IMG/VR virus record: IMGVR_UViG_3300035145_003993
Coordinates: 1 to 64,000 of that record
Strand: one strand, 5' to 3'
DNA: 64,000 nucleotides
Shown here: positions 18,922 to 35,574 of the stretch, in pieces
How the letters are laid out: every line of letters begins with the position of its first letter
Position numbering within the stretch: the first letter of the stretch is position 1
Notes under the pieces: generated by a model
Databases searched by the model: none
What the model saw: only the letters and a program-made list of their open reading frames with translations
What the model was told of the DNA's origin: nothing
Position numbers and translations under genes: made by a program

Positions 18922-19486
18922 TATAAAGTGCTGCCTTACAAATTACATAAGCGTCAGACATATCATAACAACAATCATCAAATTTTACACTTCCTTTATT
19001 AGGTCCTCGTGACAAAATCCTTTCAGGCCATTCAAAAATAAAATTATTTTTCTTAAAGTCTTCTTTTACCCAATCAAAAACTTGTTCTTTAGTATTCTTA
19101 TCTAGTTTTTTATTTAATTTAATTCCTAGGTTTTTTCTAGCACTATTAACATTTATATAGTCTGGAACAACTGAATATACTTCAGATGCAATGTAAGAAA
19201 CAATACCATTAAACCTATTTAGTTGTGACAAAGTCTTTGCTGAAGAAAATCCTTTACTGAATGATTGAAAACTTTCTTCTATACTTAGATTAATATCTTC
19301 TTCAAAGAAATATTTTTCTTTATAACTTGTAAAACTATCTTTAACTATTTTAGACTTATTAAAAATACATGATAGCTTCTTTAAATTAATATTCTCTAAA
19401 TTTATTAAATCTCCATTTAAATCTAATAAAGATACTCCAATTATTGAAGTAGATATATCTAAACCAATATATTTTACTCTGTTCAT
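18899..19486 (-). CDS. ruvC: RuvC-like Holliday junction resolvase
   Basis: IGLDISTSIIG, SIEE, RFNGIV, ARK, KEQV, DMSDAYVI. Confidence 0.85.
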   Translation of the reverse strand: MNRVKYIGLDISTSIIGVSLLDLNGDLINLENINLKKLSCIFNKSKIVKDSFTSYKEKYFFEEDINLSIEESFQSFSKGFSSAKTLSQLNRFNGIVSYIASEVYSVVPDYINVNSARKNLGIKLNKKLDKNTKEQVFDWVKEDFKKNNFIFEWPERILSRGPNKGSVKFDDCCYDMSDAYVICKAALYNERIKHK

Positions 19487-22400
19487 TAATAATCCATCTT
19501 TAATCTGAATAGCACATTATCAGTATCTTTCTTAGGATAAGGCTTAACAACTTTTGCCTTAGCTACAACATTAAGATTCTCATCATGTAAATTTATATCT
19601 GTAATATATACAAAATCTTCATCAGAGTTAAATGCAGATTCATTAAGCCTAAGGTCTTTAATATAAGATTCATTATAAGATTTGTTAGTTCTTCCTGCGT
19701 AAGCAGGTAAATTCAATTCTAAAACATTTAATCTTGAAGAACATTTAAAATCTAATTTATAACTACATTCACCAAAGTTTTCTAATGAAGGGTGAAGAAC
19801 AGTTATAATTCCTTCATTATACAAACAATGACCAACATAATTCCAGTCTGCATGTTTTGTATATGAATCTGCTCTATACATTGTTCCTTTACCATTATCT
19901 TTTAGATTTATTTTTTTTGAACCAAATGTTCCTCTTAAATCTGGATCATAAAAATTTACAGATTCTTTTTCTATTTTTTTACCAAATATTTGTGTTGAAA
20001 TGCAAAATATTTTACTAAATGTTTCAGATTTATCATTATTTAAATTGTAAAAAGGAAGTTCTTGCTTATAATAAGGAATAAAATTAGATGAAGAATCAGT
20101 TAAAGATAATTTCTTAGTTGATATATTAGGTAAATGACTTGCTACGCTATTAGAATAATCATCATTTATTTTCCTAGTTACAGGGTTAGATAAATCTTTT
20201 AAATAATTACTTCTGCTTACTTCTATAAATTGATTATCTTTAGTAATATTTGGATTTTTATACTTGATTAAAAACTTTTCACTATCCTGCGACCTAATAT
20301 CAAAATCTTCTCTGAAAAAATTATTCAGTGACAAATTCATAAAATTATCATAATTTTCTTTAAACTTTTTTGTAGATGATATATTAAAGTCATCTCTTTC
20401 GTCTAAAATTCTTAGTCTACCTATTTGGTTATAATACTGATTGAGATCAGGATTAGTTACATTTTGAAGAAGATTATTACTACTAAATATTTGTTCGTCA
20501 TCAAATAAACTGTTTAAAGAAATATAATTAAGATCAAGTTCATTATATTCATTATTATGAATCGTGTCTTCACTACCTACTTGATAATAATTTTTCAAAT
20601 TGTTTTTATTCTGGTTTTGTAAACCATTATCACAAGGTAAAATAAAATTATTTCTATATTCTAAATAATTGTCAAAATAAAAAGTATTTATTTCATTATT
20701 GATTATGAAATTAAAATCACCATTAGAAATAAAAGGTTTTAAGTAGTTAAAATAAATTTCATTTATACTTAATCCTTTTTGACAACCTAAATTAATAATG
20801 TCTAATTCATCATCGTAAAATAAAGAGTTAAAAAGTTTAAAAGTATTCTGGTCAGAATTTATATCATCATTAAATATAATATTAGGTGAAACTTTGTTAG
20901 AAAATTCAACTACAAAATTTTCAACATTAACTTCATGTCCTAAACATTTATTTGAAAAATAATGATTTACAGGACCTTTTAATAATAAATTACTTGTATT
21001 AACTTCTGAAATGTTAACAGGGTCTGAACTAGTTCCATTTAAATTGACAATACCAGATTTTTTTATATTATTATTATAATATAAAACAGGTAAACAAAAC
21101 TCAACATTTTCTTTTGAAAAATCTTTTAAGTTATTTTTACAGATAATATAATCAATATCTCTTATATGTCTATTGTAAATTCTAATATCATGTAATTCTG
21201 CAGACAAAGCATAACTAGTATTTTCATCCATATAATCATTACTTTGATCATTAACAGGAAATAAATTATTTTTAAATGAATAATTTAGATTTGAAAAACC
21301 TGTTTCAAGATGATTGTCTTCTAAATTATTACCAAATGATATATGTTTTTTTGTATAAGATCCGATTTGATCATCATCAACTTGAGAATTTATAGAAAAT
21401 AATTTTTGATATAAATTTTCCTGTGACAAAGAAATATCATTTTCGTTTGTCATAAAATTATCAAATTTATTTCCAACACAAATAAAACTGTTATTTGTTT
21501 CTTGATGATCAATAATTAAATTATTCGTATTATTAATAATTCTATTCCCAGATAAACTTACCTTTTTAGAATCAACAAAAAGCTCTAAAACAATTTCTTC
21601 AGAGGTATTAGATAGATTTCTTTTAATTAAAAAAGTAACGTTATGCCAATTATTATAATTTAAAATGTTGTCTTTGCTTAAATAAATTGCAGATTTTTCT
21701 CCTAAATAATTAGTAACAGAGTCTCTTTTTAACTCAAACTCAGGAAGAGAAGACAAATTGACTAGAAAATTTTGAATTATTTGTTTGTTATTAACATTAT
21801 CACCAAAAACAACTAATAATCTAAATGAATCTGTTAATCCAAATGAATCTGTTTGTGTTCCTTTTACAACATATATACCAATTACACCAGGAATGAAAAG
21901 AACACAACCAGGATTAAACTGATGATTTTCAATATTTTTATTATTTTGATTTATATAAAAAGAAATTGTAAGATCTTCATTACCATTTTTAAAAAAATTA
22001 TAAATATGTCCATCAGAACTATTAATATATGGATTAGGATAAGCTAAACAATTTCTATGAGTTTTATTCGTATTTTTCTGATTTGTTATATTAAAAAAAT
22101 TTAAACAATTATAATTTGAAAAACCCCAATGAGTATTAAGAGTTCTATATTTCATGTTTTCTCTATAAAAACGATATAGATTCTTAACTGATTTCTTTTT
22201 ATAATAATTTTTATCGTCGACTAAATATTTTTGTTTTACTTTCTCGACTCCAAATTTAAATTCATTTGTATCATCTTCAATTAAACCTCTACTACTTAAA
22301 GATACGTCTTTATTAAAAAACAGGCTATTTATATCTGATTTATTTTTAATAAAATTTAATTTCTCTAGTCTTCTACTAGATTTAAAATTTATAGATTTAT

Positions 22401-22677
22401 TATCTATTTCTACAAAGTTATTAAAACTAGAATCATACAATGAATCTAACAAAAAACTTCTTTTATATTTATCGACTGTTCCTGTATCACCTTTTTCAAT
22501 TGTATAATCATTTAAACTAGAAATTTTTGAATTTAATTGACCATAAACACCATGACTTTCTATTTCTAATGAATTCAAATCACTACAAAGAACTGACGCA
22601 GAAACGTATGTTTTTTGTGGCTGTAATTCGATTGTATTTCTTACAATCATTTTATCATCAATAAGATTTAAAGTCAT
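19486..22677 (-). CDS. baseplate/tail structural protein with a LamG-like domain and C-terminal tail-collar-like half domain
   Basis: LTISFY..NNWHNVTF..LFVD..LHDIRIYNR; ends VYITDINLHDENLNVVAKAKVVKPYPK..FRLKMDY. Confidence 0.65.
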   Translation of the reverse strand: MTLNLIDDKMIVRNTIELQPQKTYVSASVLCSDLNSLEIESHGVYGQLNSKISSLNDYTIEKGDTGTVDKYKRSFLLDSLYDSSFNNFVEIDNKSINFKSSRRLEKLNFIKNKSDINSLFFNKDVSLSSRGLIEDDTNEFKFGVEKVKQKYLVDDKNYYKKKSVKNLYRFYRENMKYRTLNTHWGFSNYNCLNFFNITNQKNTNKTHRNCLAYPNPYINSSDGHIYNFFKNGNEDLTISFYINQNNKNIENHQFNPGCVLFIPGVIGIYVVKGTQTDSFGLTDSFRLLVVFGDNVNNKQIIQNFLVNLSSLPEFELKRDSVTNYLGEKSAIYLSKDNILNYNNWHNVTFLIKRNLSNTSEEIVLELFVDSKKVSLSGNRIINNTNNLIIDHQETNNSFICVGNKFDNFMTNENDISLSQENLYQKLFSINSQVDDDQIGSYTKKHISFGNNLEDNHLETGFSNLNYSFKNNLFPVNDQSNDYMDENTSYALSAELHDIRIYNRHIRDIDYIICKNNLKDFSKENVEFCLPVLYYNNNIKKSGIVNLNGTSSDPVNISEVNTSNLLLKGPVNHYFSNKCLGHEVNVENFVVEFSNKVSPNIIFNDDINSDQNTFKLFNSLFYDDELDIINLGCQKGLSINEIYFNYLKPFISNGDFNFIINNEINTFYFDNYLEYRNNFILPCDNGLQNQNKNNLKNYYQVGSEDTIHNNEYNELDLNYISLNSLFDDEQIFSSNNLLQNVTNPDLNQYYNQIGRLRILDERDDFNISSTKKFKENYDNFMNLSLNNFFREDFDIRSQDSEKFLIKYKNPNITKDNQFIEVSRSNYLKDLSNPVTRKINDDYSNSVASHLPNISTKKLSLTDSSSNFIPYYKQELPFYNLNNDKSETFSKIFCISTQIFGKKIEKESVNFYDPDLRGTFGSKKINLKDNGKGTMYRADSYTKHADWNYVGHCLYNEGIITVLHPSLENFGECSYKLDFKCSSRLNVLELNLPAYAGRTNKSYNESYIKDLRLNESAFNSDEDFVYITDINLHDENLNVVAKAKVVKPYPKKDTDNVLFRLKMDY

Positions 22678-22693
22678 AATATCTCTCTTTTAA

Positions 22694-23911
22694 TTAGTAA
22701 TCAAGTCTTACGCTAATAGATAAATCAACTTCTGGATTTTTTTCAATTGGTCTTGAAGTTTTTGCAACTGCTAGTAATTCATTTGAAGCATCGTATAATC
22801 CTACGGTAGTAACATAAGAAAAAGGATCGTCACCTCTATCTTGAATACTCATAATATTCCCATCAGAATCAATATATGTAGGATTTGTTGAAAAATTAGC
22901 ATCATTAGGACCTACACGACAAAAGTATATCATTGAATTAATACTTGTTTGATTAATATAACCTATTGCAGATCTATTATCTCTACCAAATCTAGTATCA
23001 GAAATATGATCAATTATATCATCAATTGATCCAGAAGTCCATAACCCTGGAATTAGTGAACTAGAAATAGGTGTAGTACTATTTGAAGTATTTACAGATG
23101 AAATATTACCATAAACAGTTTCATCATATGCAAATATCTTTTTAGCGTCTAAAACTACAATTCCTTTATTATAAAATATTAATCCTACCTTATTATTACT
23201 ATCATCAACAATAGATCCTATTTGACCAGACACAGTTGATACATTTAAGTTAGAACTAGCTCCTGCATCTGAATATAAATTAAATGTATCTGTTCTAGAT
23301 ATATTCTTATCAATATTAGGGTTACTAGCATCAGACCCAGCATCTAAATTTTTATGAATCTTAATAGAAAATTGTTCTTTTTCTAATCCATCTCTAACAA
23401 ATAATCTTTTAAAATTGATAAAAACAGCATCTTCAATCTTTTTAGTAGCATCATCTGTAGCTTCAAAAGGTGTATAAAAATAAGAGGTTGCATTTCCTAA
23501 TAAAGATTGTGCATATTGTTGATATATATAAATCTTTTCTCTCATCATTAATGTATCATTACTAAATACTAACTTTCCACTAGCATCAGTCGTCGGAGAA
23601 AGATCTGTAACAGTTGTACTTTCTAAATGAGATCCAATTGTAATATCTAACATTTCATTTGAAGTTTGAAAACTGTGATCTTGATCAAAAACTGTTTGAT
23701 AAAGTGAAGAAGTTACTGATCCTGAAGTTTCTAAACCACCAGAAACAAAAACTTCATATTTTTTTCTAGTATTTGTAGGTGTTGTAGTAGTTACACCCTC
23801 TGTCGTAGTATCATATTTACTTGCAATATCTACTTGAAGAATATCTACTAATTGTCTTATGTTAGATTTTTTACTAACTTTATCTGAATTTGATATTTCA
23901 AAATATGTCAT
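22694..23911 (-). CDS. baseplate/tail structural protein with C-terminal tail-collar-like half domain
   Basis: VGLIFYNKGIVVL; ends SYVTTVGLYDASNELLAVAKTSRPIEK..SVRLDY, a paralogous end to the downstream gene. Confidence 0.7.
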   Translation of the reverse strand: MTYFEISNSDKVSKKSNIRQLVDILQVDIASKYDTTTEGVTTTTPTNTRKKYEVFVSGGLETSGSVTSSLYQTVFDQDHSFQTSNEMLDITIGSHLESTTVTDLSPTTDASGKLVFSNDTLMMREKIYIYQQYAQSLLGNATSYFYTPFEATDDATKKIEDAVFINFKRLFVRDGLEKEQFSIKIHKNLDAGSDASNPNIDKNISRTDTFNLYSDAGASSNLNVSTVSGQIGSIVDDSNNKVGLIFYNKGIVVLDAKKIFAYDETVYGNISSVNTSNSTTPISSSLIPGLWTSGSIDDIIDHISDTRFGRDNRSAIGYINQTSINSMIYFCRVGPNDANFSTNPTYIDSDGNIMSIQDRGDDPFSYVTTVGLYDASNELLAVAKTSRPIEKNPEVDLSISVRLDY

Positions 23912-23931
23912 TATTTATTTTCCTTTTTAAT

Positions 23932-24693
23932 TTATTGAACATCAGAACTTGTAATAGTTACAGGAACAATCAAAGATGATTTAGTAAAGTTTCCAATTAT
24001 TTCAACTTGAGTTTTAATTTCGTTTCTATCACTTCCACTATCAGAAGTTGCATAGTATTTATAAGAATCAGTAGTAACTTTACCAATTGCTGTAATGTAA
24101 ATTTTACCGAACTTTTGATTACTAAATTCTGCTTCACCAAGTTCTCCTTCTAAAGATGCATTAATTTCATAATATGCAATATCATCTTCAACTTTGTATG
24201 GAGTCACATCATTCAATTTTAATAACTTATCAAAGACTTTTACTGTAAACTTGTTATCAATTAAAGCACTTTCTGTAAGTGTAAAATCTGAATCTTGGTT
24301 AACAAAAGTTTTAAAACTAATTGGTGCGTTTTTATTTGAAGAAGCATTAGAATTAGAAGTAATTCGAATAGGTGTTTGTTGATAATCTCTCAATTTTAAA
24401 TAAGGAAAAGCATAAATACTATTAGTATTATTTGCTATAAATGTTCTAAGTGGATATTTCAAAGCCAGCATCTCATCAGTTACTGCTTCAAAAATGGGAG
24501 TATTTTTTTCTATTTTTTCTTTACCGATAATTAAACCGTATTTTTTTAGAATAGAATAATCTACTTCGTCATCTCCTAGTCTAAATTTACTTATATTAAA
24601 AGAATTATCATTTCTGGAAAGTAATTCTCTTCCACGTTCAGTTAAAACTGCATCTATAATTACATTGTTTGTTGCGTGATTTAAAAATCCCAT
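23932..24693 (-). CDS. baseplate/tail structural protein with N-terminal tail-collar-like half domain
   Basis: MGFL..IIDAVLTERGRELLS..NISKFRLGDDEVDY..PIFEA; AGGAG RBS. Confidence 0.7.
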   Translation of the reverse strand: MGFLNHATNNVIIDAVLTERGRELLSRNDNSFNISKFRLGDDEVDYSILKKYGLIIGKEKIEKNTPIFEAVTDEMLALKYPLRTFIANNTNSIYAFPYLKLRDYQQTPIRITSNSNASSNKNAPISFKTFVNQDSDFTLTESALIDNKFTVKVFDKLLKLNDVTPYKVEDDIAYYEINASLEGELGEAEFSNQKFGKIYITAIGKVTTDSYKYYATSDSGSDRNEIKTQVEIIGNFTKSSLIVPVTITSSDVQ

Positions 24694-24721
24694 TTAATTT
24701 TCTCCTAAGTTATTCATATTT

Positions 24722-24729
24722 TATTTATA
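24722..24729 (-). promoter_or_regulatory. T4-type late promoter TATAAATA
   Basis: Exact consensus in a 43-bp gap, 28 nt upstream of ATG 24693. Confidence 0.45.
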
Positions 24730-24736
24730 ATCATCG

Positions 24737-26374
24737 TTAGTTATTAATAAAATTCTTTATAACAAATTGTTTTTCATATTTTTCAAGATCATTTAATCTA
24801 AATATAGTAAATTTAAATTTGTCGTCATTTGTGATAACATCAATTTTACTGTTGTCTCCTAAAGAAATTTCACCAAAGTCAGGTGTAACATAAAGTTTTA
24901 TGTTTTTAATATTTTTAGAAATAGGAAGATTATCAATCATTTTATCTTCATTATCAAAAAACTTGCTCTTATTTAACATAAACTCATTAGGCATATTTCT
25001 CCTAGCACCAATACTACATACTAAATCATAAATAATTTTATCTTCAAAAGGATCATATCCAACTGCAACTTGTTGTGAATAATTTGAAAAATATCCATGT
25101 GCGTCAATTGTTCTGATTGCATAAATACAAATTTTTCCTTGTTCATATAAATAATCTGTATATTCATAAGAAACTTTGTTAGGTGTTCTTATAATTAAGC
25201 TTTCTTCTGTTTCCTCTTCAGGTTCATATAGATCATCATCACTATGACCTTCAAGTTGAGCAATTACTCTAAAAGGTTCTTCTAAGTTGTTTCTTTTGAG
25301 AATTTGATAGCCTTTTGCATCATATTGATAGTCTGTTGGTTCATCCCATTCAATAAATATTTTTTTATTTTTCGTCATCCTAAACCTCAAATTATCAGGA
25401 GGTGGCGGAGCTTCTTCCTCTTTACATAGAATATCTTTTGTAATATAAGGATGATCACATATTAAATATTTATTTAAAATACATTTGTCAATATTATCCA
25501 ATTCAGAATAAAGATAAACATTATAAACAACATATCTGTAAGTCTGTCCATATCGAACAGCTTCATCTTCATAAGAAGATTTTAAATGAAGTTCGTCGTT
25601 ATTTTTGTTACTAGTTATAAATTTAGCACACAAAAAATTGTATTTGTTTCCATTCAATATGTATTTTTCAATTAATAATCCACATCTAATTCCGTTTATC
25701 TTTGATAAAAGCCTTGATCCAGATATTTCATTTACAGATTTTTCAAAAGGTTTACATTTATTAAAAATATTTCCTTGAGTACTATTTTTAATTTCTTCTA
25801 AATCTTCTTCTTTTTGATTTAAACTAAATATTAAATTATCATAATTTTGATCATAATCAACCAAGTCAGGTTCTGGAAAATCAGAAATACTATTTAATTG
25901 ATTTATATTAACGTCAAAATCTTCAGGTCTTAAATAAGACATTCTGTATGAATATGTAACTCTATCAGGTATAATAGATAATTTATCTTTATTATAAAAT
26001 GAAGATATTTTTAGTTTTTCTTCGTCGTTATCTAATCTATTAATAACATACTTTCTTTTAGGAGACAAAGTATCTAGTTTATTAAAAAATTCTAAATATT
26101 CACCTTTTAAAGAGTTAGTTTTAGATAAATTTTCTATATTTTCTATAAAGTTATCGCGATTATAATCTTTTTTATCATTTTCATTATGGTTTTCTAGACT
26201 TAATCTTATAAATCTTTTTTTATAATAAGAAAAGTCTGATATTGCTATCACATCATCGTTGATAGTAGTTTCATTTTTTTCGTAGTAATTGTAAATAAAA
26301 TCTGTATTTACTTTTAAATCATTACTCGAATTTTTGCTATTTAATGAAAATATATTATCTATAACTTTTAACAT
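24737..26374 (-). CDS. structural protein with a fibronectin type III-like domain
   Basis: PPPPDNLRF..IEWDEP..GYQILKR..YTD..YAIRTIDAHGYFSNYS. Confidence 0.65.
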   Translation of the reverse strand: MLKVIDNIFSLNSKNSSNDLKVNTDFIYNYYEKNETTINDDVIAISDFSYYKKRFIRLSLENHNENDKKDYNRDNFIENIENLSKTNSLKGEYLEFFNKLDTLSPKRKYVINRLDNDEEKLKISSFYNKDKLSIIPDRVTYSYRMSYLRPEDFDVNINQLNSISDFPEPDLVDYDQNYDNLIFSLNQKEEDLEEIKNSTQGNIFNKCKPFEKSVNEISGSRLLSKINGIRCGLLIEKYILNGNKYNFLCAKFITSNKNNDELHLKSSYEDEAVRYGQTYRYVVYNVYLYSELDNIDKCILNKYLICDHPYITKDILCKEEEAPPPPDNLRFRMTKNKKIFIEWDEPTDYQYDAKGYQILKRNNLEEPFRVIAQLEGHSDDDLYEPEEETEESLIIRTPNKVSYEYTDYLYEQGKICIYAIRTIDAHGYFSNYSQQVAVGYDPFEDKIIYDLVCSIGARRNMPNEFMLNKSKFFDNEDKMIDNLPISKNIKNIKLYVTPDFGEISLGDNSKIDVITNDDKFKFTIFRLNDLEKYEKQFVIKNFINN

Positions 26375-26376
26375 GA

Positions 26377-29300
26377 TTACACTATTTCTGCTTCAATTAT
26401 ATAAGAAAAACTATCGTAAAAATCGCTGTCATATAAGCCATCAACATCAATAATTCTTTCTAAACCAATATCACTATTATTTGAATAATAAGACTTTAAA
26501 CTTTTCTTAATATCATCTCTTCCAATATAAATAGAAAAAATATCATAATATTTATTAAATACAAAATTTTCAATAACTTTTTCTTGATTAATAAATTGAC
26601 TAATCTGTTTGAAAAAATCGACAAAATAAGATTCATTATTGACAATATCTATTTTTCTAAAATTTTGATTTAAAATATCTATTATATTTTGTGCCTTTTC
26701 ATAAGACTCAGAAAAAGTTTCAACAAAATCTTTTTGTGACATACTTTCAAAATACGCTGTAACAAAATTATTTGACGAATCAGAATTATCTAAAAAAGAC
26801 TTGATATTATTTTCGTCGATATATTTTTGACTTCTATAATTTGTATATTTAATAGCATTTGAAAAAATTGCGTCTTTTACAATCTTTATTGAATTTTTAT
26901 CAACACCTTCAGATTCAATATTAATTAAATCTTCTTCACCTCTAAATAATCTTTCACTATTAACATTTATTAAAACATTATCTCTTATAAATGCAATAGC
27001 TTCTTCAAAACTTAAAATATTATATCTATTCCTAATATCATTTTGATCAACATCATAAACACCAACAAAATCATCTATAAATATTCCATCATAATCATTA
27101 GGGATTCTTTGTAATAATTCTAAATGAGAAGGGGTTATATCTGTTAACATAGGTGTATAAAATTTATACATTGGAGGAATAAAAATATTAGGATATTTGT
27201 GATTTGAAATATGTATTTTAAACTTTAATAATTTATTATTAGATAAAACATTTGCAAAATCAAAGTCTATCCCGAATCTCATAATATCATATCTTAAGTT
27301 TAAAATATTTAAAAGTCTTGATCCTTGTAATGCTAAAGAACTTTTGTTTTCTTCTTTCCTTATCATTGTACTGAAAAATGCACCTGGGATATTATTTGTT
27401 TTATTTATTAAACTATCAAAATGATCTTCAAAGTTTTGATTTAAGTCTGAATTTATTTGTTGAAATACTTTCTGGAATTCTGTATCTTGATAGAAAAAGT
27501 AATCATTCATTTTTTTTGAAATTGTATTTAATCTTATATCGTTTTCAATAGTTTGGTTCAAATTTAAAATACCTAAATCTTCTAAATTTGATAAACTATT
27601 TTTTATATCTACAAAAGGCTCAGTTTCAGAACTAAATTTTTCAAACTGAGTAAAGTAACTCATAATCGAATCAATTGACATAATTTCCATAATGTCAGAG
27701 TTATTTAATATCTTTTGAATATTTAAAATTTGAGAATAAAAATTAGTAAAGAAAACGTCATCGTTTTCAAATTCAGTAGGAATCTCTTTTTCAAATTCAT
27801 ATTTTTTACTATTAGAAACATTATTTAATTTATCAAATGAAAGTAAATTATAAACTTCCTTGTCCCAAAAACAACTCCAATTAAAATCATCATCTTTTAT
27901 TAATATTTTTGAAATATTTTTCCTAATTGAAGATTCAACAACTAAGTCAAATACTGAGCTATAGATATGACAAGAAGTTTTTAATAAATTAATAATAATT
28001 TTTATATCTTGAGAATTCTCATTAACAAATTTTAATGCGTCTTCAATATCTTCTATATTATCTAGCTTATTTTCAAAATCGTTGTCTAAAAACTTTAACA
28101 TGTCAATAATATTATTATTAATAAATTCTTTAAAGTAAGGTTGTTCTTCAAGATTACCTAAAGCATAATCTTTAAATGATACACCATAACGATGATAATT
28201 TAAAGTATTTTCTATATCGTTAATTGTTTTTTCTTGATTGTTATTAATATCGTCAAATGTATTTGTAACATTGTCAATTAAATATCTAAAATCTGTGTCT
28301 TGATTAAAATAACCATTTTTTGTAGATTTTGTATTTCTAAGAATATTAAAGATAGAAACTTCATTTTTATCAAAATTATATAGAGTTTTATTATCGAAAT
28401 CTTGTCCTAACGAAACTTCAGAATTCTCTAAATAAGCATCATAGTTATAAAAATTTGAATAGATATATTCATATAAACCTTCAACAGATTGTTCAGATCC
28501 TGTAGAAGAAAAATTATTTTTGTCTACAATGTAGAATCCTTTTTCATCTTCTAGATCATATGCAGAACAATAACCACCACCATATGTAACATTATAATCA
28601 TATTTACTTGTTACAAATGGAAAACAAAAAGTGCAAGAACTTCCAGGAAGAATTCCAAAGTCAAAGCAATGATTATTAATGAAAGCTTTAAATCTTTTTG
28701 GTAAGCCGTTTGAAAATGTTTCTTTTTCTTCATTACCAGGAAAAGCGATATTTGTTGGATTTATTTCAGTATTAGCTGATCTACCTTGGGTATCACTTGA
28801 ATTATTATCATATAAATGACTTGTTAACTTAATATCAGGAAAATCAACAACTCTTAACGTATAGCTTTTTTGTTTTTTCACATTTTTAGTAGAATAAACA
28901 TCTTGAATATAACTTAAAAAAGCTCCATCAGTCTTATCATTAATTCTATTAAAGTTATCTTCAACAGTAATATTTTTATGTTTTAATAACGCTGATATTG
29001 CTAAACACTTACCGATATCTGGATTATCTGAGTCTATTATTGCATCACTTAAAAGTTTATCGTATCCATTATAATAACCTGACCAGTTGTTTGAAATAGA
29101 TTTATTAAAAACATTATAATGTAAATTCCATAAAATAAAATTAAAATAAGAAGTTGATGTTTGAAATTGACTGTTTGTAAAATATTTAGAAGCAAAATCT
29201 TTTATATTTTGACTATTTATTTGAAAACTTTGTGGGTTATTTACTTCAATATTAGTTTCAATAGAATTTTTAACGTTATTATAATCTTTTGAGAAATTAA

Positions 29301-31881
29301 ACTTTGTGTATTTATCTTCACCTTGAGAAACAATGAAGTCACTATTTTCTAATGTATCTAAAGAATTTTTGAATAAATTAGAGTAAACTAAAGATACATA
29401 AGGCTCATTGTTTAAAACTTTATTAACATTTTTAGCTTTAAATTTGTATGATTTTAAATAATCCAAGAATGCATTTTCGTTTAAATAACTTAGTTTTTTA
29501 TTTTTTAAATTAAAAATATTTCTTCTTAAATTAAAAGCCAATTTTTCCCATTTATTATTTTTAACACCTTCTAATTTTAAATCATCTGTAATGTAAGAAA
29601 TATTATCTTTGTTGTTTTTTTGAGAATAAGTAATAATTCTATCATTTAAAAATTCATTTTCCTTTGTAAGACTATCATCTAAACTTATAAATTTATCTTT
29701 GATTTTGTTAATATCTAATTCATTCATAGTATTTTTAAATAAAACAAAACCTTTTGTTAATTCTAAATCGTTTTTATGATTTCTAAATTCATTTTCTATC
29801 AAAGATTCATAGTCTGTGTCATTTTGAAAAGTTTTAGTAGATTCTCCTTTAATATAATTTAGCACAAAATCTTTTAAATTTTCATTATATTCTAATTGAG
29901 TATTACCATCATTAAACATAGTCAAATGATTTTTTTTATTAAATAAACTTCTTGAGTCTTCTTCATAGTAATTTCTAAAAATATTAGTAAATAAATTAAT
30001 ATTTGTATCACTAATAAATTTTCTATTTTTTGTAGTATTGTTTAATCGATCAAATTGATACGAATTCGCAGAGTGATAATTTAAGAAAGACATCTTTTTA
30101 GAATTATATTTACTTATAGAAACACTATTTGTTTCAACATCATCTTGGTTTATTAATACCTTTTCGTTGTAATTATAGTTTTTATCTCTATAAACTGTAA
30201 AAGAAAATTTCGGACTAGAAAGAATTCTTTGCGCATTATTTGTTATATTAATATTTTCAAATAAATCTTTATTATCGTAAAAATCATGTTTTAAAAAATC
30301 AATATCAGACTCATATAAAACAAATTTTTTAAGATCACTAAGATCAAGTTTTGAATAATAAGCTAAATCAATATTAGTAAATAAAAATGAGTTAAAATAT
30401 TGATTTTTAAAAAATTTGTCACTAACTTCTACTTCCTCAGGATTAGCTTTTTTTGTTTTTTCATAATTATTTATAATATTAGTACTATAACTTTTTTTGT
30501 AATTATTATTAGTAGTTTCTGTAGATAGCAAAAATTTTCCGCAATTAAATAAATCATTTTCCAGAAACAAGCTAGTATTAAAAACATCAAAAGTGTTATC
30601 ATTTATAAACGATATTTTATTTTTTAAATCTTTTTTTAAATATGAAGTTGTTTGAAATGTGTTATCAAATCGAGACAGATTAAATACAACATCATCTTTT
30701 TGATAAATCTCATCGTTATTTAAATTATTAAAAATATTATTAGAATTGTTTTCAATTGATAAAATACTATTTATTTTTATTAATGGTATTTTATCAAAAT
30801 CTTTACTATCAATTATATCATATAAAATTTTATTGTTATTATTATTTGATAGTATTTTTTTAGACCAATATTCATAAGATATAGAGTCTTTGTAAAAACC
30901 GTTTAAAGAAACACTCGTATTTAAAATAATCTGAGATATAACTCTATCTGAATTTAGCAAAAATTTGTTGGTATCAATATTTTTTAAAAAGCTATCTTTA
31001 GAATTAGGTCTTGAGATCATCAGATCAAAAATTTTATCTAACTTTTCTCCAAAATATCCAAAAACTTCATTTCTTTCTCCTAAAATTAAATTTTCAATAC
31101 TATTGTTTGATATTTTATTATTTTGATGAGTATATTTGTGATTATATGCTATATTAAAATTAAAAATCGTATTAGCTAATTTTCCAAATGTATTTGATTG
31201 ATTATCATTTAAAAAAAACTTAGAAATTTTATTTCCAAAATTATATTTAATTTTTAATTGATCTTTTTGATTCAAAATAAAATCAATATCAGAATACATT
31301 CTTTTAAGAAGTTGATTATTTTCTTTTAAATCTTCTATGTAAACTTCTCTTAGTATTTCTCTATTTTCGCTATGTAGATAAAAGCTATTTGCATTGGAAT
31401 TTTGAATATTTTCTATATAGTCTTTTTTTAATCTATAAATAGTAGAAGGATGAAGACTAGACTCGTTTGTTTCGAAATCAATTAAATTTTTTACTTTTAT
31501 TAATTCGTGACTTAATACATTAGGAAATTTTATATTTCGAAATGAATCAGATGAGTTAGTCATTATTAATGATAAATTATTTTTTAAAAAGTCTGACGTT
31601 ATTCCTTGTTCTATAAAATCAAGATCTTCTGAAATGTTATTTTGAATAACTTCAGAAATACTTTCCTCCAATTCAGTTTTAAAATCCTCATTAGTGTTTG
31701 ATATAGTAGAAGAAATATTTTTCAATTCATTAGATAATATTGATAAGTTTGTTAATTTTTTATTGTTAATTATAACAGGATAACTTCCGATATCTATATT
31801 ATTATTTGTTGTAGTTGTACCACTATTTTGATTTGTTAGTGTGGAGAAAAAAGTTCCTATCGTCCCTATAGAAAAAGTCAT
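26377..31881 (-). CDS. very large Asn/Lys/Ile/Phe-rich hypothetical protein (baseplate block)
   Basis: Uninterrupted 1834-aa ORF; no recognisable domain. Confidence 0.8.
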   Translation of the reverse strand: MTFSIGTIGTFFSTLTNQNSGTTTTNNNIDIGSYPVIINNKKLTNLSILSNELKNISSTISNTNEDFKTELEESISEVIQNNISEDLDFIEQGITSDFLKNNLSLIMTNSSDSFRNIKFPNVLSHELIKVKNLIDFETNESSLHPSTIYRLKKDYIENIQNSNANSFYLHSENREILREVYIEDLKENNQLLKRMYSDIDFILNQKDQLKIKYNFGNKISKFFLNDNQSNTFGKLANTIFNFNIAYNHKYTHQNNKISNNSIENLILGERNEVFGYFGEKLDKIFDLMISRPNSKDSFLKNIDTNKFLLNSDRVISQIILNTSVSLNGFYKDSISYEYWSKKILSNNNNNKILYDIIDSKDFDKIPLIKINSILSIENNSNNIFNNLNNDEIYQKDDVVFNLSRFDNTFQTTSYLKKDLKNKISFINDNTFDVFNTSLFLENDLFNCGKFLLSTETTNNNYKKSYSTNIINNYEKTKKANPEEVEVSDKFFKNQYFNSFLFTNIDLAYYSKLDLSDLKKFVLYESDIDFLKHDFYDNKDLFENINITNNAQRILSSPKFSFTVYRDKNYNYNEKVLINQDDVETNSVSISKYNSKKMSFLNYHSANSYQFDRLNNTTKNRKFISDTNINLFTNIFRNYYEEDSRSLFNKKNHLTMFNDGNTQLEYNENLKDFVLNYIKGESTKTFQNDTDYESLIENEFRNHKNDLELTKGFVLFKNTMNELDINKIKDKFISLDDSLTKENEFLNDRIITYSQKNNKDNISYITDDLKLEGVKNNKWEKLAFNLRRNIFNLKNKKLSYLNENAFLDYLKSYKFKAKNVNKVLNNEPYVSLVYSNLFKNSLDTLENSDFIVSQGEDKYTKFNFSKDYNNVKNSIETNIEVNNPQSFQINSQNIKDFASKYFTNSQFQTSTSYFNFILWNLHYNVFNKSISNNWSGYYNGYDKLLSDAIIDSDNPDIGKCLAISALLKHKNITVEDNFNRINDKTDGAFLSYIQDVYSTKNVKKQKSYTLRVVDFPDIKLTSHLYDNNSSDTQGRSANTEINPTNIAFPGNEEKETFSNGLPKRFKAFINNHCFDFGILPGSSCTFCFPFVTSKYDYNVTYGGGYCSAYDLEDEKGFYIVDKNNFSSTGSEQSVEGLYEYIYSNFYNYDAYLENSEVSLGQDFDNKTLYNFDKNEVSIFNILRNTKSTKNGYFNQDTDFRYLIDNVTNTFDDINNNQEKTINDIENTLNYHRYGVSFKDYALGNLEEQPYFKEFINNNIIDMLKFLDNDFENKLDNIEDIEDALKFVNENSQDIKIIINLLKTSCHIYSSVFDLVVESSIRKNISKILIKDDDFNWSCFWDKEVYNLLSFDKLNNVSNSKKYEFEKEIPTEFENDDVFFTNFYSQILNIQKILNNSDIMEIMSIDSIMSYFTQFEKFSSETEPFVDIKNSLSNLEDLGILNLNQTIENDIRLNTISKKMNDYFFYQDTEFQKVFQQINSDLNQNFEDHFDSLINKTNNIPGAFFSTMIRKEENKSSLALQGSRLLNILNLRYDIMRFGIDFDFANVLSNNKLLKFKIHISNHKYPNIFIPPMYKFYTPMLTDITPSHLELLQRIPNDYDGIFIDDFVGVYDVDQNDIRNRYNILSFEEAIAFIRDNVLINVNSERLFRGEEDLINIESEGVDKNSIKIVKDAIFSNAIKYTNYRSQKYIDENNIKSFLDNSDSSNNFVTAYFESMSQKDFVETFSESYEKAQNIIDILNQNFRKIDIVNNESYFVDFFKQISQFINQEKVIENFVFNKYYDIFSIYIGRDDIKKSLKSYYSNNSDIGLERIIDVDGLYDSDFYDSFSYIIEAEIV

Positions 31882-31895
31882 GCCTGTAACCTTTA

Positions 31896-34556
31896 TTATT
31901 TAAGTGAAAATACAATATCAGATATTCTAGTATTATTATCTAGTAAATATGTTTTATTTGAAAAGTTGTTTTCTAAACTATAATCTTTTTTTACATAATT
32001 GTTTATATTAATTGTAGAAACAACTTTTTTGTTATTATTGATAATAATACATAATCTTTCAAAAACATTCATAAAGTATAAACTGTTATTCTCTCCCCAT
32101 AAATTTATTGCTTTATCAAAATCATCATCTGATATTCTTGAGAATTTTTCTTCAAAAGGACAAATAATTGTTAAAATGTTATCTTTATAATTATAGTAAA
32201 GATTATCTAAAACAATACTAAATCCTTCATCCAATAAAATTTTGTTCTTGTATGATTTGTTATTATTAATTTTGTCTAATTTTATTTTAGAAGAATCAAA
32301 TTCTAAAGTTAATAACATTGAAATATTGAATGATAAATTAGTATAATTCTTTTCTTTAAAAAAATCTTCTAAATTTAAACTAGCTATTACAAAGTCTTTT
32401 TTCTTTTTAAATATTTTAATGAAATTACTCTGTTTTTTATATCTTAAATAAGAAATATAATTTAAATTATTTTTGTCATTTTCTAATGATAAATTAAAAA
32501 GTTGTTTTCTATAATTAAAAATATTTGACTCGCTTAAAATTTTTCTAGATAGTAACTCTTCATCAAGTTTAACATTAGGAATTTGTCTATTAATGTTATT
32601 TCTATTTAAAGAAAAAGAACTTAAGTTTTTACTTTCAGATATATCAATTATTTTTTTATATATTTGTCTATCACTTGAATCATTATTATATAAATCTTTT
32701 GAAACTAATTTATTAATTTTACTAAATTTTCCAGGAAAAGACTTATTTAAAAAAGAAGAAACTTTTTCTTTTTCATCTTCATCGTCTATTTTATTTAATT
32801 TACCTAATTTACTTAATGAATTATTTGGTAAAGTCATTGATCTACAACTTATTGATGCATTTGCTTCTTCAGGAGAATAATTAGAATTTAAATTAATAAA
32901 GATATTTCCATTTTCATCTTCAGAAATTAAATTAGATACTGCTTCATAAGTAATCTCTTCAATTTTTTCATTTTTTAAATTAGTATAATTCTTTTTAATT
33001 TCTATAACCGAATTTTTAGAAATTTCTTCAAATAAATAATCATTACTATCGACGTTATACCCGAAATTTGATAAATTTGTCTTTGTGTTATATACTAATT
33101 TCTGATTAAGTTTAAATTTTAATTGGTTTGCTGAACTTATAAAATTATTAAAATCAATTAATTTATCGAACATTCTAGAAAAATCTAACTCTTCAGAAAA
33201 ACTGTCATCTTGTCTGACTATTTCTTCTGAAGTTAGTATTTCAACAGGATATATTTGTAATTTGTCTAATTTAATGATAAATTCTGTTTCTGTATTTACG
33301 AGTCCTCCTCGAGCATATAAAGTAGAATCTAAATCTTGATTGAATAATGTATCAAAATTAAATTCATTGTTTTTTGATGTAGTTATAATATTATCTTCGT
33401 TAAAATTAGATGTAGTGTATAATTTATTTATATTTTTAATTGTTCCTTGATTTATTATTTCTATAGTAATTCCTTTTTTAGTAAAACTTGTGGGAATAAA
33501 TGATAAATCTGGATTAGAAAAACTAATTGATAAAGATCTAAAATTTTCAATTAAAAAATCAGAAGTTTTAGTTTTAGGATTAATTAATTCACCGTCCAAA
33601 GTTAAAACTTTAATTTTGTCATGAAAGGCTTCACTAATAAATCTATCCTTAAATTTATCGAAATAAGTTTCATATAATCCAATAACTCTACTTTTTGAAA
33701 TAGTCTTAGTTTTTAAAAATTCATTTTCATTGTAAGAAAAATTTAAATCTAAATTAACTTCATCACCTTCAGAACTTAAAAAATAATTATATAAATCAAA
33801 CAATAAATCAAATTTATAATTTTCAATTAATTTTTTAGGTAAAGACGAAGAACTAAAATCGTATATATTGTTATTGAAATTAATGCTAACATTGATTTTT
33901 GATTTATCAAATGAATCTATATCATTTAAAAGATCACTATAAATTATTTTTGGACCTTTTTGATAAACAGACTTTAAGTCTGTTGTAATATCATAATTTC
34001 TAAAATCAATATCTAATGTGTTTCTTAAAAGATTAAATATTTCGTCTTGAAAATCTACAACTTTATAATCTTCTAATTTTACATTGCTATTTTGTGTATA
34101 TGAATAGTTCTCTATTATGTTTTTATTTTTATCTAAAAAATATATTTTTATCGTGTGAGGAATTTCTGAATTTGTAGACTCTCCGGTTGACGGGTCTCTT
34201 TTAATAACTCCTATTACAGATTTTATTGTATTTAAACTTACACCAAAAGTTAATTCTTCATAGACACTTTCATCATTGTTTGTCGAAATTGGATTGTCTT
34301 CATATTCATATTGTTTTATTTTTAAATAATCATTATTAAATATTTTATTTAAATAAGACGAAGAATATCCTTCTTGTGTTGAATTTAAATTCAAAAGATC
34401 TGAATTTTTAACGACACAAATTTTTATAAATCTAGAATTTTTATTTAATAAATTGTTTTTATTTACAGTAATGTTAAAATACAAATTATCACTATCAGAG
34501 ACAATATCTCCTGATGATGGACTTATATCAAACGATTTAATAATATTATTACTCAT
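31896..34556 (-). CDS. large hypothetical protein (baseplate block)
   Basis: 886-aa ORF. Confidence 0.8.
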   Translation of the reverse strand: MSNNIIKSFDISPSSGDIVSDSDNLYFNITVNKNNLLNKNSRFIKICVVKNSDLLNLNSTQEGYSSSYLNKIFNNDYLKIKQYEYEDNPISTNNDESVYEELTFGVSLNTIKSVIGVIKRDPSTGESTNSEIPHTIKIYFLDKNKNIIENYSYTQNSNVKLEDYKVVDFQDEIFNLLRNTLDIDFRNYDITTDLKSVYQKGPKIIYSDLLNDIDSFDKSKINVSINFNNNIYDFSSSSLPKKLIENYKFDLLFDLYNYFLSSEGDEVNLDLNFSYNENEFLKTKTISKSRVIGLYETYFDKFKDRFISEAFHDKIKVLTLDGELINPKTKTSDFLIENFRSLSISFSNPDLSFIPTSFTKKGITIEIINQGTIKNINKLYTTSNFNEDNIITTSKNNEFNFDTLFNQDLDSTLYARGGLVNTETEFIIKLDKLQIYPVEILTSEEIVRQDDSFSEELDFSRMFDKLIDFNNFISSANQLKFKLNQKLVYNTKTNLSNFGYNVDSNDYLFEEISKNSVIEIKKNYTNLKNEKIEEITYEAVSNLISEDENGNIFINLNSNYSPEEANASISCRSMTLPNNSLSKLGKLNKIDDEDEKEKVSSFLNKSFPGKFSKINKLVSKDLYNNDSSDRQIYKKIIDISESKNLSSFSLNRNNINRQIPNVKLDEELLSRKILSESNIFNYRKQLFNLSLENDKNNLNYISYLRYKKQSNFIKIFKKKKDFVIASLNLEDFFKEKNYTNLSFNISMLLTLEFDSSKIKLDKINNNKSYKNKILLDEGFSIVLDNLYYNYKDNILTIICPFEEKFSRISDDDFDKAINLWGENNSLYFMNVFERLCIIINNNKKVVSTININNYVKKDYSLENNFSNKTYLLDNNTRISDIVFSLK

Positions 34557-34557
34557 T

Positions 34558-35574
34558 TTACTCTATAACCAATGTAAACATATTAACGAAGCTATAATCA
34601 TTATTAATACTATAATATAGTCTTCTATTTTCTTCAGAGATTCTATCTTTAATATTTCTAGTCAAAAATAATTTTCCTATAAGATATACTTGTTTAAAAT
34701 TAAATTCTTTTTTATCATAAAATTCTCCTAATTTAACAAAAGAAAGTTTTTCTAATGTTTCTAAATTAGTTTGATCATTTTTAATTTTATGTAATTCAAA
34801 TAAAAACACATCTTCATCAATCATCTTTTCTTCATTTAGAACATAATCTAATTTAAACATTTTATTATTTTTTTCAAGAGTTTTAATTAATTCTACAACA
34901 AAATCTTCTTTATTACTTATTGAAGGGATTAATTCATTAATACTTAATCTCTTAAAAAGAATTTCAATATTACTTTTATTTAATTTATTTAATTCTTCTT
35001 GTGTAAAATCTTTAGAAGAGTTTTCTACTGGTAAAAATTTGTTTCTTGTTTTATCTTCAAATCTTTTATCTTGATGAACATATTCTAAATTAGTTATGTT
35101 TGTTGATAAATGTTTAACAGTAGGATATGAAGAAGTTCTTGTATTTTCACCGAAATCAAATTCATCTTTTTCATCTTTAAAATCAAAAAAAATTTCTCTA
35201 TTATCATTTTCATTTACAAGATTTTTATTATCAATTAACTTTAAATCAACCAAATGATCAGATAATGTGCTGTTTGACTCTTTATTAACAAATAATATGT
35301 TATTATCCAATTGATCAAAAGATATAACAGAAGACAAATTATATTCAGGATTTATAATGTTTGAAACATTAACATCAACTTCAAAAGGAAGGTAGTTTGA
35401 TAAATCAGAAACTTTAAAACTTTTGTTAGAATTAGTATTTTCATTATATACAATATTACTATCTGAGAATGTGTAATATTTAAAACTTAATGATCCTGAT
35501 GATAGTTTATCTCTTCCAAATTCTGTAAGTTTATAGTCAATAAGACGTTTATCTTTTTCTAAAAATCCTGCCAT
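34558..35574 (-). CDS. structural protein with N-terminal tail-collar-like half domain (paralogue of 23932..24693)
   Basis: MAGFLEKDKRLIDYKLTEFGRDKLSSGSLSFKYYTFSDSNIVY..LPFEV; GAGGA RBS. Confidence 0.65.
   Translation of the reverse strand: MAGFLEKDKRLIDYKLTEFGRDKLSSGSLSFKYYTFSDSNIVYNENTNSNKSFKVSDLSNYLPFEVDVNVSNIINPEYNLSSVISFDQLDNNILFVNKESNSTLSDHLVDLKLIDNKNLVNENDNREIFFDFKDEKDEFDFGENTRTSSYPTVKHLSTNITNLEYVHQDKRFEDKTRNKFLPVENSSKDFTQEELNKLNKSNIEILFKRLSINELIPSISNKEDFVVELIKTLEKNNKMFKLDYVLNEEKMIDEDVFLFELHKIKNDQTNLETLEKLSFVKLGEFYDKKEFNFKQVYLIGKLFLTRNIKDRISEENRRLYYSINNDYSFVNMFTLVIE

What the first reader, a model, noticed from the sequence alone, without database searches (positions are those of the whole stretch)
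19486..35574. Tail-collar (DUF3751-like) domain apparently split into two N-half and two C-half genes
Known from recall: the tail-collar/fibre-attachment domain begins ILTxxGxxxLA...IxxMAVGD and ends IREVGLFDxxGxLIAVA..PxxxK...RMVL within one ~150-aa unit. Seen: the first half is only at the N-termini of 23932..24693 (AVLTERGRELLS..ISKFRLGD) and 34558..35574 (YKLTEFGRDKLS..FKYYTFSD). The second half is only at the C-termini of 22694..23911 (YVTTVGLYDASNELLAVAK..PIEK..VRLDY) and 19486..22677 (YITDINLHDENLNVVAKAK..PYPK..LKMDY). Each has its own start. Inference: the domain is rebuilt in trans by strand complementation, giving two heterodimeric and possibly combinatorial sockets that attach different appendages to the baseplate.
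Basis: partly seen in the sequence, partly recalled or inferred. Interest (0 to 1): 0.72.

Follow-up and report, generated by a model that had tools for sequence, protein, structure and literature searches.

The report
Split tail-fibre adaptor domain in phage
In this marine T4-like phage, and in a large group of its relatives, a small baseplate "adaptor" domain that other phages make as one piece appears to be encoded as two halves on separate proteins that are predicted to fold together, which would be a modular way of plugging different appendages onto the tail.

Summary
The window is the first 64 kb of a 211-kb T4-like phage genome. Two small ORFs (253 and 338 aa) start with an "N-type" module. 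Two other ORFs (405 and 1063 aa) end with a "C-type" module. The genome holds no further copies.

None of the four matches Pfam PF12571. However, a profile of 30 diverse PF12571 domains aligns collinearly with both modules:
- Positions 4-45 align with the N-type module (E 1e-5).
- Positions 71-131 align with the C-type module (E 2e-6).
- Shuffled controls give E of 0.014 or worse.

A complex prediction of the adjacent pair scores 0.75, against 0.00 for the best control. The interface is exactly N-type residues 10-98 and C-type residues 327-405. These termini are the most conserved parts of their families, yet they are the least confident parts of the monomer models.

The architecture is clade-wide. 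Eighty IMG/VR loci hold 90 N-type and 167 C-type ORFs, never fused, mostly in the order N-C-C.

The second pair, the complete fold across chains and the baseplate "socket" role are untested. Gene tallies argue against fixed one-to-one pairs. I rate this a new variant of a known kind, of moderate interest.

The parts
23932..24693 (-). P0001, an N-type protein of 253 aa. It has an N-terminal half-domain module followed by a C-terminal Ig-like beta-sandwich (about residues 95-253).
   Evidence: The family has 1902 hits. The monomer model has pLDDT 76-95 for residues 99-253 but only 39-66 for residues 1-98.
24400..24693 (-). N-type module of P0001 (residues 1-98), the predicted interface with P0003.
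   Evidence: One search places residues 10-98 in the interface. In one search, PF12571 positions 4-45 align with N-type positions 12-49 (E 1e-5). In one search this segment is 74% identical across the family, against 41% for the rest.
22694..23911 (-). P0003, a C-type protein of 405 aa. It has a beta-rich body of unknown fold (residues 1-326) followed by a C-terminal half-domain module.
   Evidence: The family has more than 2700 hits, all unannotated. There is no Foldseek match in the PDB.
22697..22933 (-). C-type module of P0003 (residues 327-405), the predicted interface with P0001.
   Evidence: One search places residues 327-405 in the interface. In one search, PF12571 positions 71-131 align with the last 55 aa (E 2.3e-6). 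In one search this segment is 77% identical across the family, against 53% for the body. In one search its pLDDT blocks are 53-84, against 80-96 for the body.
19486..22677 (-). P0004, the second C-type protein (1063 aa). It has a large variable N-terminal part and the C-type module at its extreme C-terminus.
   Evidence: BLASTP of the last 45 aa against P0003, E 2e-4; E 1.6e-10 with an HMM built from other phages only.
19489..19704 (-). C-type module of P0004 (residues 992-1063).
34558..35574 (-). P0002, the second and divergent N-type protein (338 aa). The N-type module covers about residues 1-47 (35434-35574).
   Evidence: E 8e-5 with an HMM built from other phages only. Searches show that its family of 90 hits keeps the N-terminal motif (66% identity against 39% for the rest).
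24737..34556 (-). Three large ORFs (545, 1834 and 886 aa) between the two N-type genes. They carry neither module and are probably further tail or baseplate structural proteins.
45101..47438 (-). Context: baseplate wedge genes gp6-like (45101-46945) and gp25-like (46950-47438), upstream in the same transcription direction.

Best explanation
The four genes encode virion (peripheral baseplate or fibre-network) proteins of a T4-like myovirus.

A small adaptor domain is here encoded in two pieces. Its nearest sequence relative is the N-terminal tail-collar/adaptor domain of P2-type tail fibres (PF12571). Its nearest structural neighbour is the gp8-like BW3TFN/arm-segment fold.
- 'N-type' proteins carry roughly the first third of the domain (strand-helix-strands) at their N-terminus, followed by an Ig-like domain.
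- 'C-type' proteins carry the remainder at their extreme C-terminus, preceded by variable bodies.

The two pieces co-fold into one intertwined unit. P0001 residues 10-98 pair with P0003 residues 327-405.

By analogy with P2 gpH-gpI and with BW3TFN proteins, this unit would dock on a tether of a wedge protein. That would fix different C-type bodies to the baseplate.

Shown: the modules, their exclusive terminal positions, their separate ORFs, the clade-wide conservation, the profile similarity and the predicted binding.

Inferred: co-folding into one domain, the baseplate location, and the docking role.
For: 1. Context. The module lies in a T4-like structural region. gp25 and gp6 lie upstream. 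gp23, gp20, gp21 and gp17 are in the window.

2. Profile similarity. hhalign of 30 diverse PF12571 domains against the module alignments gave:
- N-type: Prob 82%, E 1e-5, PF12571 positions 4-45.
- C-type: Prob 89%, E 2.3e-6, PF12571 positions 71-131.
- Controls: 30 column shuffles gave a best E of 0.044 and 0.014; reversed alignments gave 0.28 and 0.43.

3. Predicted binding. Complex prediction on the full-length chains with family alignments scored 0.75, against 0.00 for the best of 3 controls. That mark was reached by 58 of 80 solved complexes and 2 of 110 mismatched pairs. There were about 270 contacts, essentially all between P0001 10-98 and P0003 327-405.

4. Monomer models.
- P0001 residues 1-98 have pLDDT 39-66; the rest has 76-95.
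- P0003 residues 331-405 have pLDDT 53-84; the body has 80-96.
- Yet these termini are the most conserved parts: 74% against 41%, and 77% against 53%.

5. Census of 80 IMG/VR loci.
- 90 N-type and 167 C-type ORFs, with none carrying both.
- The N module starts at residue 1 in 83 of 90.
- The C module ends within 3 aa of the stop in 164 of 167.
- Gene orders: NCC in 47 loci, NNCC in 13.

6. Breadth. 1160 clusters at 50% identity carry the N module. All of the top 150 are 271 aa or shorter, and the module begins at residue 1 in 149 of them, at residue 3 in the other.

7. Structural neighbours of P0003. These are phage adaptor proteins, matched only from about residue 25-53 to their C-terminus:
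- 8jou_a: residues 46-138.
- 9rkv_A: residues 48-138.
Against: - No Pfam, PHROG or PDB sequence hit for any of the four proteins.
- The hhalign probabilities are 82-89%, not above 95%. The confident alignment cores are only about 22-28 columns.
- The complex tool gives no coordinates, so a complete fold across the chains was not seen. My own unpaired alignments were used, so the tool's calibration holds only roughly.
- No experimental PF12571 structure is recognisable in the PDB for comparison.
- N:C gene numbers are unequal.
- No proteomic or EM evidence that these proteins are in the virion was found.
Confidence: 0.6

Rival explanations
1. The two proteins do bind through these termini, but each terminus is an independently folded small module. 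The pair is an ordinary heterodimer (for example by edge-strand augmentation), not one domain split in two. The likeness to the halves of PF12571 would be partial or convergent.
For: - The predicted interface is real in the model.
- The P0003 C-module already packs on its own N-terminal strand in the monomer model and reaches pLDDT 70-84 over residues 361-405.
- The hhalign cores are short.
- There is no Pfam hit.
Against: - Both similarities are collinear and complementary on one 150-position domain.
- Nearly every residue of P0003 336-405 and most of P0001 10-98 is in contact. That is more like an intertwined unit than two docked globules.
- The N-module alone has pLDDT 39-66 despite 74% family conservation.
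Confidence: 0.2
2. The N-type and C-type termini do not pair with each other. Each is a separate docking peptide or oligomerisation element for a third component, such as a tether of the gp7-like wedge protein or homotrimerisation of the C-type proteins. The complex prediction would then be a false positive.
For: - N:C gene tallies are unequal: 1:5 in Mel-JY01, 2:1 in RM378 and 3:2 in G303.
- In P2, the one-piece domain binds an extension of gpI between two gpH chains (preprint 10.64898/2026.09.14.750843).
- The tool's calibration shows 2 of 110 mismatched pairs passing.
Against: - The score was 0.75 against 0.00 in all three controls, and the three runs agreed at 88-96% of contacts.
- N and C genes are invariably clustered on one strand, with N upstream.
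- Both termini map to one known domain.
Confidence: 0.13
3. Artefact: one gene was broken by a sequencing or assembly error, or the two ORFs are joined by programmed frameshifting or readthrough, so that a single chain is made.
For: The N and C genes are adjacent with short gaps (20 nt here). In Mel-JY01 and immuto they happen to be in the same frame.
Against: - The ORFs are separate in 80 IMG/VR loci and in 8 complete or deposited genomes, with no fusion among 90 N-type and 167 C-type ORFs.
- The frame offset differs between phages: +2 here, +1 in RM378 and 0 in Mel-JY01 and immuto.
- P0003 has its own SD-like site and ATG.
- P0002 is 11 kb away from any C-type gene.
Confidence: 0.02

Closest known systems
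PF12571 (Phage_tail_fib, formerly DUF3751): the N-terminal tail-collar/adaptor domain of P2 gpH-type tail fibres and R-type tailocin fibres
   Same: - Profile-profile alignment is collinear: the N-type module aligns with positions 4-45 and the C-type module with positions 71-131.
- The hallmark motifs LTxxG...(h)xhGD and hGLYDxxxxLhAVxK are shared.
- It lies in a contractile-tail baseplate or fibre gene module.
- In P2 the domain attaches the fibre to a wedge-protein tether by beta-sheet contacts (preprint 10.64898/2026.09.14.750843).
   Different: - There is no HMM hit at any threshold.
- The domain is divided between two polypeptides.
- The C-half sits at the C-terminus of its protein, not at the N-terminus of a fibre.
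- No fibre shaft repeats follow it.
- The partners carry an Ig-like domain, an unknown beta-rich body, or large variable parts instead.
BW3TFN connectors (PF25691): T4 gp8, A511 Gp105 and the phage 812 arm segment protein
   Same: - That fold is described as an N-terminal helix plus a three-stranded sheet, then loops and short strands (PMC13433997). The helix and sheet match the predicted secondary structure of the P0001 N-module: helix 19-26, then strands 37-41, 45-51 and 54-61.
- The role is to connect receptor-binding proteins to the baseplate (PMC10811340).
   Different: - There is no sequence or profile similarity.
- BW3TFN proteins are one-chain homodimers.
Separate fibre-tail adaptor proteins, for example phage GP4 (PDB 8JOU)
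   Same: - It is a precedent for the adaptor function residing on a small separate protein rather than on the fibre itself.
   Different: - There the adaptor is a complete small protein. Here each partner seems to hold only part of the fold.
- The structural match is weak.
- GP4 is a podovirus.

Membership tests
PF12571 Phage_tail_fib (DUF3751) | Match to the Pfam HMM above the gathering score (23 bits) | tested here: not met
   hmmscan of the four proteins and of their RM378 and Mel-JY01 homologues gave no hit at E up to 1. A six-frame search of the whole 211-kb genome gave none at E up to 10. The positive control, P2 gpH, scored 196.9 bits.
PF12571 Phage_tail_fib (DUF3751) | Remote homology detectable by profile-profile comparison, collinear over the domain | tested here: met
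   hhalign gave the N-type module at positions 4-45 (Prob 82%, E 1e-5) and the C-type module at positions 71-131 (Prob 89%, E 2.3e-6). Shuffled and reversed controls gave E of 0.014 or worse.
PF12571 Phage_tail_fib (DUF3751) | One contiguous unit of about 150 aa at the N-terminus of a fibre protein | tested here: not met
   The halves are on separate ORFs in every genome examined, with no fusion among 90 N-type and 167 C-type ORFs. The C-half is always at a C-terminus.
PF12571 Phage_tail_fib (DUF3751) | Same three-dimensional fold as the one-chain domain | not testable with these tools
   The complex tool returns no coordinates. No PDB chain is recognised by a PF12571 profile.
PF25691 BW3TFN / T4 gp8 fold | HMM or profile similarity | tested here: not met
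   There is no PF25691 or PF09215 hit. hhalign against a T4 gp8 alignment gave E 0.66 and 0.73. hhalign against the phage K arm segment protein gave E 0.18-0.3.
PF25691 BW3TFN / T4 gp8 fold | Structural similarity | tested here: inconclusive
   [not shown]
T4-like (gp23/gp20/gp6/gp25) myovirus structural module | Hallmark genes present and syntenic with the four ORFs | tested here: met
   Hallmark genes found: gp23 (PF07068, 5e-80), gp20, gp21, gp17, gp25 (PF04965) and a gp6-like gene. The nearest relatives by major capsid protein are LR756508, RM378, Mel-JY01 and immuto, and all of them carry the N and C modules.
Obligate heterodimer (split domain) | The two chains bind through the half-domains | tested here: met
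   This is a prediction only: ipSAE 0.75 against 0.00 for the best control, with the interface at P0001 10-98 and P0003 327-405. It was not tested for P0002 or P0004.

The most novel reading that the evidence does not exclude
A plug-and-socket system for building baseplates. One conserved N-type half-domain protein pairs promiscuously with several different C-type half-domain proteins: two here and up to five in Mel-JY01. Each completed domain docks on the wedge. A phage can then swap or add peripheral appendages (lectin-like LamG bodies and others) by exchanging only a C-type gene. This would be a previously undescribed, clade-wide mechanism of host-range modularity in abundant marine myoviruses, based on trans-complementation of a single small fold.
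Probability: 0.3. Interest if true: 0.7.

Novelty: new variant of a known kind. Interest (0 to 1): 0.55.

Why it matters
Tail-fibre adaptor domains decide which receptor-binding proteins a phage can carry. A version assembled from two polypeptides is conserved in over a thousand 50%-identity clusters of mostly marine T4-like phages, and also in cultured phages of Flavobacterium, Microcystis and Rhodothermus. It would matter in three ways:
- It would annotate two large families now labelled 'hypothetical'.
- It would give a natural example of a domain split by gene fission and rebuilt in trans.
- It would suggest a simple handle for understanding appendage exchange in these phages.

It is a structural-biology curiosity with annotation value rather than a new principle. 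Separate adaptor proteins and beta-strand 'rope' attachments are already known.

Tried and rejected
- **Family scans.** Pfam and PHROG scans of the four proteins and their neighbours gave no informative hit.
- **PDB sequence searches.** Single proteins and module profiles found nothing.
- **PF12571 profile against the PDB.** No hit, so no experimental reference structure of the one-chain domain was available.
- **T4 gp8 hypothesis.** My own lead, from the look of the gp8 termini. It was rejected at sequence level. It stays open only as a weak structural resemblance.
- **Plain HMM of the N-type module against P2 gpH.** It hit the fibre-repeat region (residues 159-186) instead of the N-terminus. 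The LTxxG motif alone is therefore not diagnostic.
- **Foldseek for P0003.** PDB and AFDB Swiss-Prot gave nothing. BFVD gave only uncharacterised relatives.
- **ESM Atlas feature search.** Only hypothetical viral clusters.
- **IMG/VR and GTDB scans for P2 gpH.** Only near-identical sequences came back. Diversity had to come from the genome search.
- **Literature.** Nothing found on RM378 or Mel-JY01 virion proteomes. One search was wasted on an ambiguous term.
- **Not done because of caps.** The second pair (P0002 with P0004), the cross pairs and higher stoichiometries could not be folded, because one complex job was allowed.
- **Frameshift or readthrough fusion.** Considered and rejected.
Full report
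**What the window is.** The window is the first 64 kb of a single 211,364-bp virus contig. Its GC content is 22-25% over most of its length.

It carries T4-type hallmark genes, nearly all on the minus strand:
- major capsid protein gp23 (2434-4242; PF07068, 5e-80)
- portal gp20, prohead protease gp21 and terminase gp17
- a fused SbcD/SbcC-type nuclease, a primase and a RuvC-like resolvase
- gp25 (46950-47438) and a gp6-like wedge protein (45101-46945)

The finding lies between the wedge genes and the replication genes. In T4-like phages this is where peripheral baseplate and fibre genes sit.

By capsid protein, the nearest deposited relatives are the metagenomic megaphage LR756508, Rhodothermus phage RM378, Microcystis phage Mel-JY01 and Flavobacterium phage immuto. 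The phage therefore belongs to a 'far-T4' lineage, not to T4 proper.

**Check of the observation.** The four ORFs and their terminal motifs are exactly as described. I call the first-half motif the N-type module and the second-half motif the C-type module.

HMMs built only from other phages were run against all 373 ORFs of the genome:

| HMM | Window proteins | Next best ORF |
|---|---|---|
| N-type | P0001 4.8e-15; P0002 8e-5 | 0.047 |
| C-type | P0003 1.1e-27; P0004 1.6e-10 | 0.29 |

Six-frame searches of the whole genome find two of each module and no more. Each gene has its own start. P0003 begins 20 nt after the P0001 stop codon, in another frame, behind an AAGGA motif. The three large ORFs between P0002 and P0001 carry neither module. 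P0002 is the weakest member, but its own family of 90 homologues keeps the N-terminal motif.

**Similarity to the tail-collar domain.** None of the four proteins, and none of their relatives in RM378 or Mel-JY01, matches PF12571 or any other informative Pfam or PHROG family. They are not members by the family's own criterion.

I collected 30 diverse PF12571 domains from 301 bacterial genomes and compared their profile with alignments of the two modules:

| Comparison | PF12571 positions | Module positions | Prob | E | Score |
|---|---|---|---|---|---|
| N-type | 4-45 | 12-49 | 82% | 1e-5 | 35.9 |
| C-type | 71-131 | last 55 residues | 89% | 2.3e-6 | 39.2 |

Thirty column-shuffled controls reached at most score 16.4 and 18.8 (best E 0.044 and 0.014). 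Reversed alignments and a T4 gp8 alignment gave nothing.

The confident cores are short, at 22-28 columns. A plain HMM of the N-type module preferred a fibre-repeat segment of gpH. I therefore treat this as good evidence of remote homology, not as proof.

**Do the halves come together?** One complex job was allowed. I used it on the adjacent pair, with full-length chains and 70-row family alignments, so that each protein could have satisfied its terminus internally.
- The score was 0.75 (three runs: 0.72, 0.78, 0.75), against 0.00 for the best of three controls.
- In the tool's calibration that mark was reached by 58 of 80 solved complexes and 2 of 110 mismatched pairs. The calibration holds only roughly here, because my own alignments were used.
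- The interface consists of P0003 residues 327-405 (plus 1-6 and 11) and P0001 residues 10-98 (plus a few others), with about 270 contacts.
- Almost every residue of both modules is in contact. That looks like an intertwined unit rather than two docked globules.
- The tool returns no coordinates, so I could not verify the fold.

**Monomer models.**
- P0003 folds with mean pLDDT 84.8. Its body (residues 1-330) scores 80-96 per ten-residue block, but residues 331-405 score 72, 54, 53, 71, 84, 76, 72 and 70.
- P0001 has a confident Ig-like C-terminal domain (residues 99-253, blocks 76-95; generic Ig-like matches). Its residues 1-98 score only 39-66.
- These poorly determined termini are the best conserved parts of their families. 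P0001 residues 1-98 are 74% identical across the family, against 41% for the rest. P0003 residues 327-405 are 77% identical, against 53% for the body. P0002 residues 1-47 are 66% identical, against 39%.

High conservation combined with low stand-alone confidence, in the same residues that form the predicted interface, is what a half-domain would show.

**Structural neighbours.** Foldseek found nothing for P0003 in the PDB or in AFDB Swiss-Prot. BFVD returned only uncharacterised relatives.

The exhaustive VIA search put phage tail adaptors at the top. Each is matched only from about residue 25-53 to its C-terminus:
- 8jou_a, the GP4 fibre-tail adaptor: residues 46-138
- 9rkv_A, the N-terminus of a phage 7-7-1 tail fibre: residues 48-138
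- 9c39_K and 9d93_Ra

One search shows that 9euf_b is the arm segment protein of phage 812. It belongs to the BW3TFN family (PF25691; A511 Gp105, T4 gp8-like fold). It is described as an N-terminal helix, a three-stranded sheet, and then loops and short strands (PMC13433997). The missing N-terminal helix and sheet correspond to the predicted secondary structure of the P0001 module: helix 19-26, then strands 37-41, 45-51 and 54-61.

**Distribution.** The families of P0003 and P0001 have more than 2700 and 1902 members respectively in the 90%-identity collection. They are largely marine (Tara) and often lie on the same contigs.

Whole-record tallies of N:C modules:

| Genome | N:C |
|---|---|
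| This phage | 2:2 |
| RM378 | 2:1 |
| Mel-JY01 | 1:5 |
| immuto | 1:2 |
| LR756508 | 1:2 |
| G303 (complete IMG/VR genome) | 3:2 |
| G304 (complete IMG/VR genome) | 2:2 |
| G305 (complete IMG/VR genome) | 1:2 |

In 80 diverse IMG/VR loci:
- There are 90 N-type and 167 C-type ORFs, and none carries both modules.
- The N module starts at residue 1 in 83 of 90.
- The C module ends within 3 residues of the stop in 164 of 167.
- All lie on one strand with N upstream. The orders are NCC in 47 loci, NNCC in 13 and NCCCCC in 4.
- C-type proteins range from 101 to 1657 aa.

An exhaustive search with the N module finds 1160 clusters at 50% identity. All of the best 150 are 271 aa or shorter, and the module begins at residue 1 in 149 of them, at residue 3 in the other.

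The frame offset between the N and C genes varies between phages. That excludes a conserved recoding fusion.

**How it most likely works.**
- Shown: two conserved terminal modules, always on separate proteins of one gene cluster in a baseplate region; remote similarity to complementary parts of PF12571; and predicted binding through exactly those parts.
- Inferred: the two modules co-fold into one adaptor unit. By analogy, this unit anchors the attached bodies to a tether of a wedge protein at the baseplate periphery. Those bodies are the Ig-like domain of P0001, the unknown beta-rich body of P0003 and the large variable part of P0004.
- The analogies are P2, where the one-chain domain holds the fibre on the C-terminal extension of gpI by beta-sheet contacts (preprint 10.64898/2026.09.14.750843), and BW3TFN proteins, which thread on a linker of the wedge or arm scaffold (PMC10811340, PMC13433997).
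- The unequal gene tallies suggest that one N-type protein serves several C-type proteins, rather than two dedicated pairs.
- I put 0.6 on this account.
- The rivals are an ordinary heterodimer of complete small modules (0.2), no mutual binding (0.13) and an artefact or recoding fusion (0.02).

**Comparison and novelty.** In function and sequence the unit resembles PF12571. In structure it possibly resembles BW3TFN. It fails the defining HMM test for both families, and it fails the one-chain architecture test.

Separate adaptor proteins are known, for example in GP4. I found no description of this adaptor fold being divided between two polypeptides, and neither family has any annotation. I rate it a new variant of a known kind, with interest 0.55. 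The finding is real, clade-wide and testable, but it refines known attachment mechanisms rather than adding a new one.

Noticed in passing
window 14798-17929 (-): One 1043-aa ORF combines a calcineurin-like phosphoesterase (Metallophos, residues 4-189) with an SbcC/Rad50-like ATPase (residues 279-1040). In T4 the gp47 and gp46 nuclease subunits are separate. Here they appear fused. Mel-JY01 has a similar ORF of about 1066 aa after its primase.
   Followed up: partly
window 54001-64000, compared with 14000-54000: GC content jumps abruptly from 22-25% to 33-37% at about 54 kb. The richer part holds a plus-strand ORF (54153-56066). It also holds two giant minus-strand ORFs: 56859-61841 (1660 aa) and 61890-66911 (1673 aa). 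The first has hits to PHROGs annotated as tail fibre or head decoration. The capsid gene region (2-4 kb) is also richer, at 39%.
   Followed up: no
window 50778-51974 and 51935-53191 (-): Two tandem paralogous glycosyltransferase genes (phrog_2170) overlap by 40 nt. They lie directly upstream of the baseplate genes.
   Followed up: no
window 2434-4242 (-): The major capsid protein is 602 aa, but the Gp23 domain covers only residues 325-592. About 300 N-terminal residues have no family match.
   Followed up: no
window 39664-43167 (-); L002:10482-12257: Laminin_G_3 (concanavalin-like lectin) domains occur in the 1167-aa ORF next to the wedge genes (residues 169-287). They also occur in the last C-type protein of Mel-JY01. 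P0004 has an 'IRIYN' motif typical of this fold but no Pfam hit.
   Followed up: partly
L005 (P2 gpH residues 159-186): The N-type HMM aligns better to the gpH segment DASLTAKGFTQLSSATNS, at the start of the fibre repeats (PF03406), than to the true N-terminus of gpH. The LTxxG-helix motif therefore recurs within fibres.
   Followed up: no
L001 (RM378) 6365-8946: RM378 has the order N-C-N (p129, p128, p127). Its second N-type gene starts 2 nt after the C-type gene ends. It is the only one of the five deposited or own genomes first compared with an N-type gene downstream of a C-type gene.
   Followed up: no
L141 (LR756508, 484 kb) 9001-14289: A 484-kb metagenomic megaphage carries the same N-C...C cluster. 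It also has the closest capsid protein (41% identity over 96% of the query). The module therefore spans genome sizes from 130 to 484 kb.
   Followed up: partly
window 1-64000: ARAGORN found no tRNA or tmRNA gene.
   Followed up: yes
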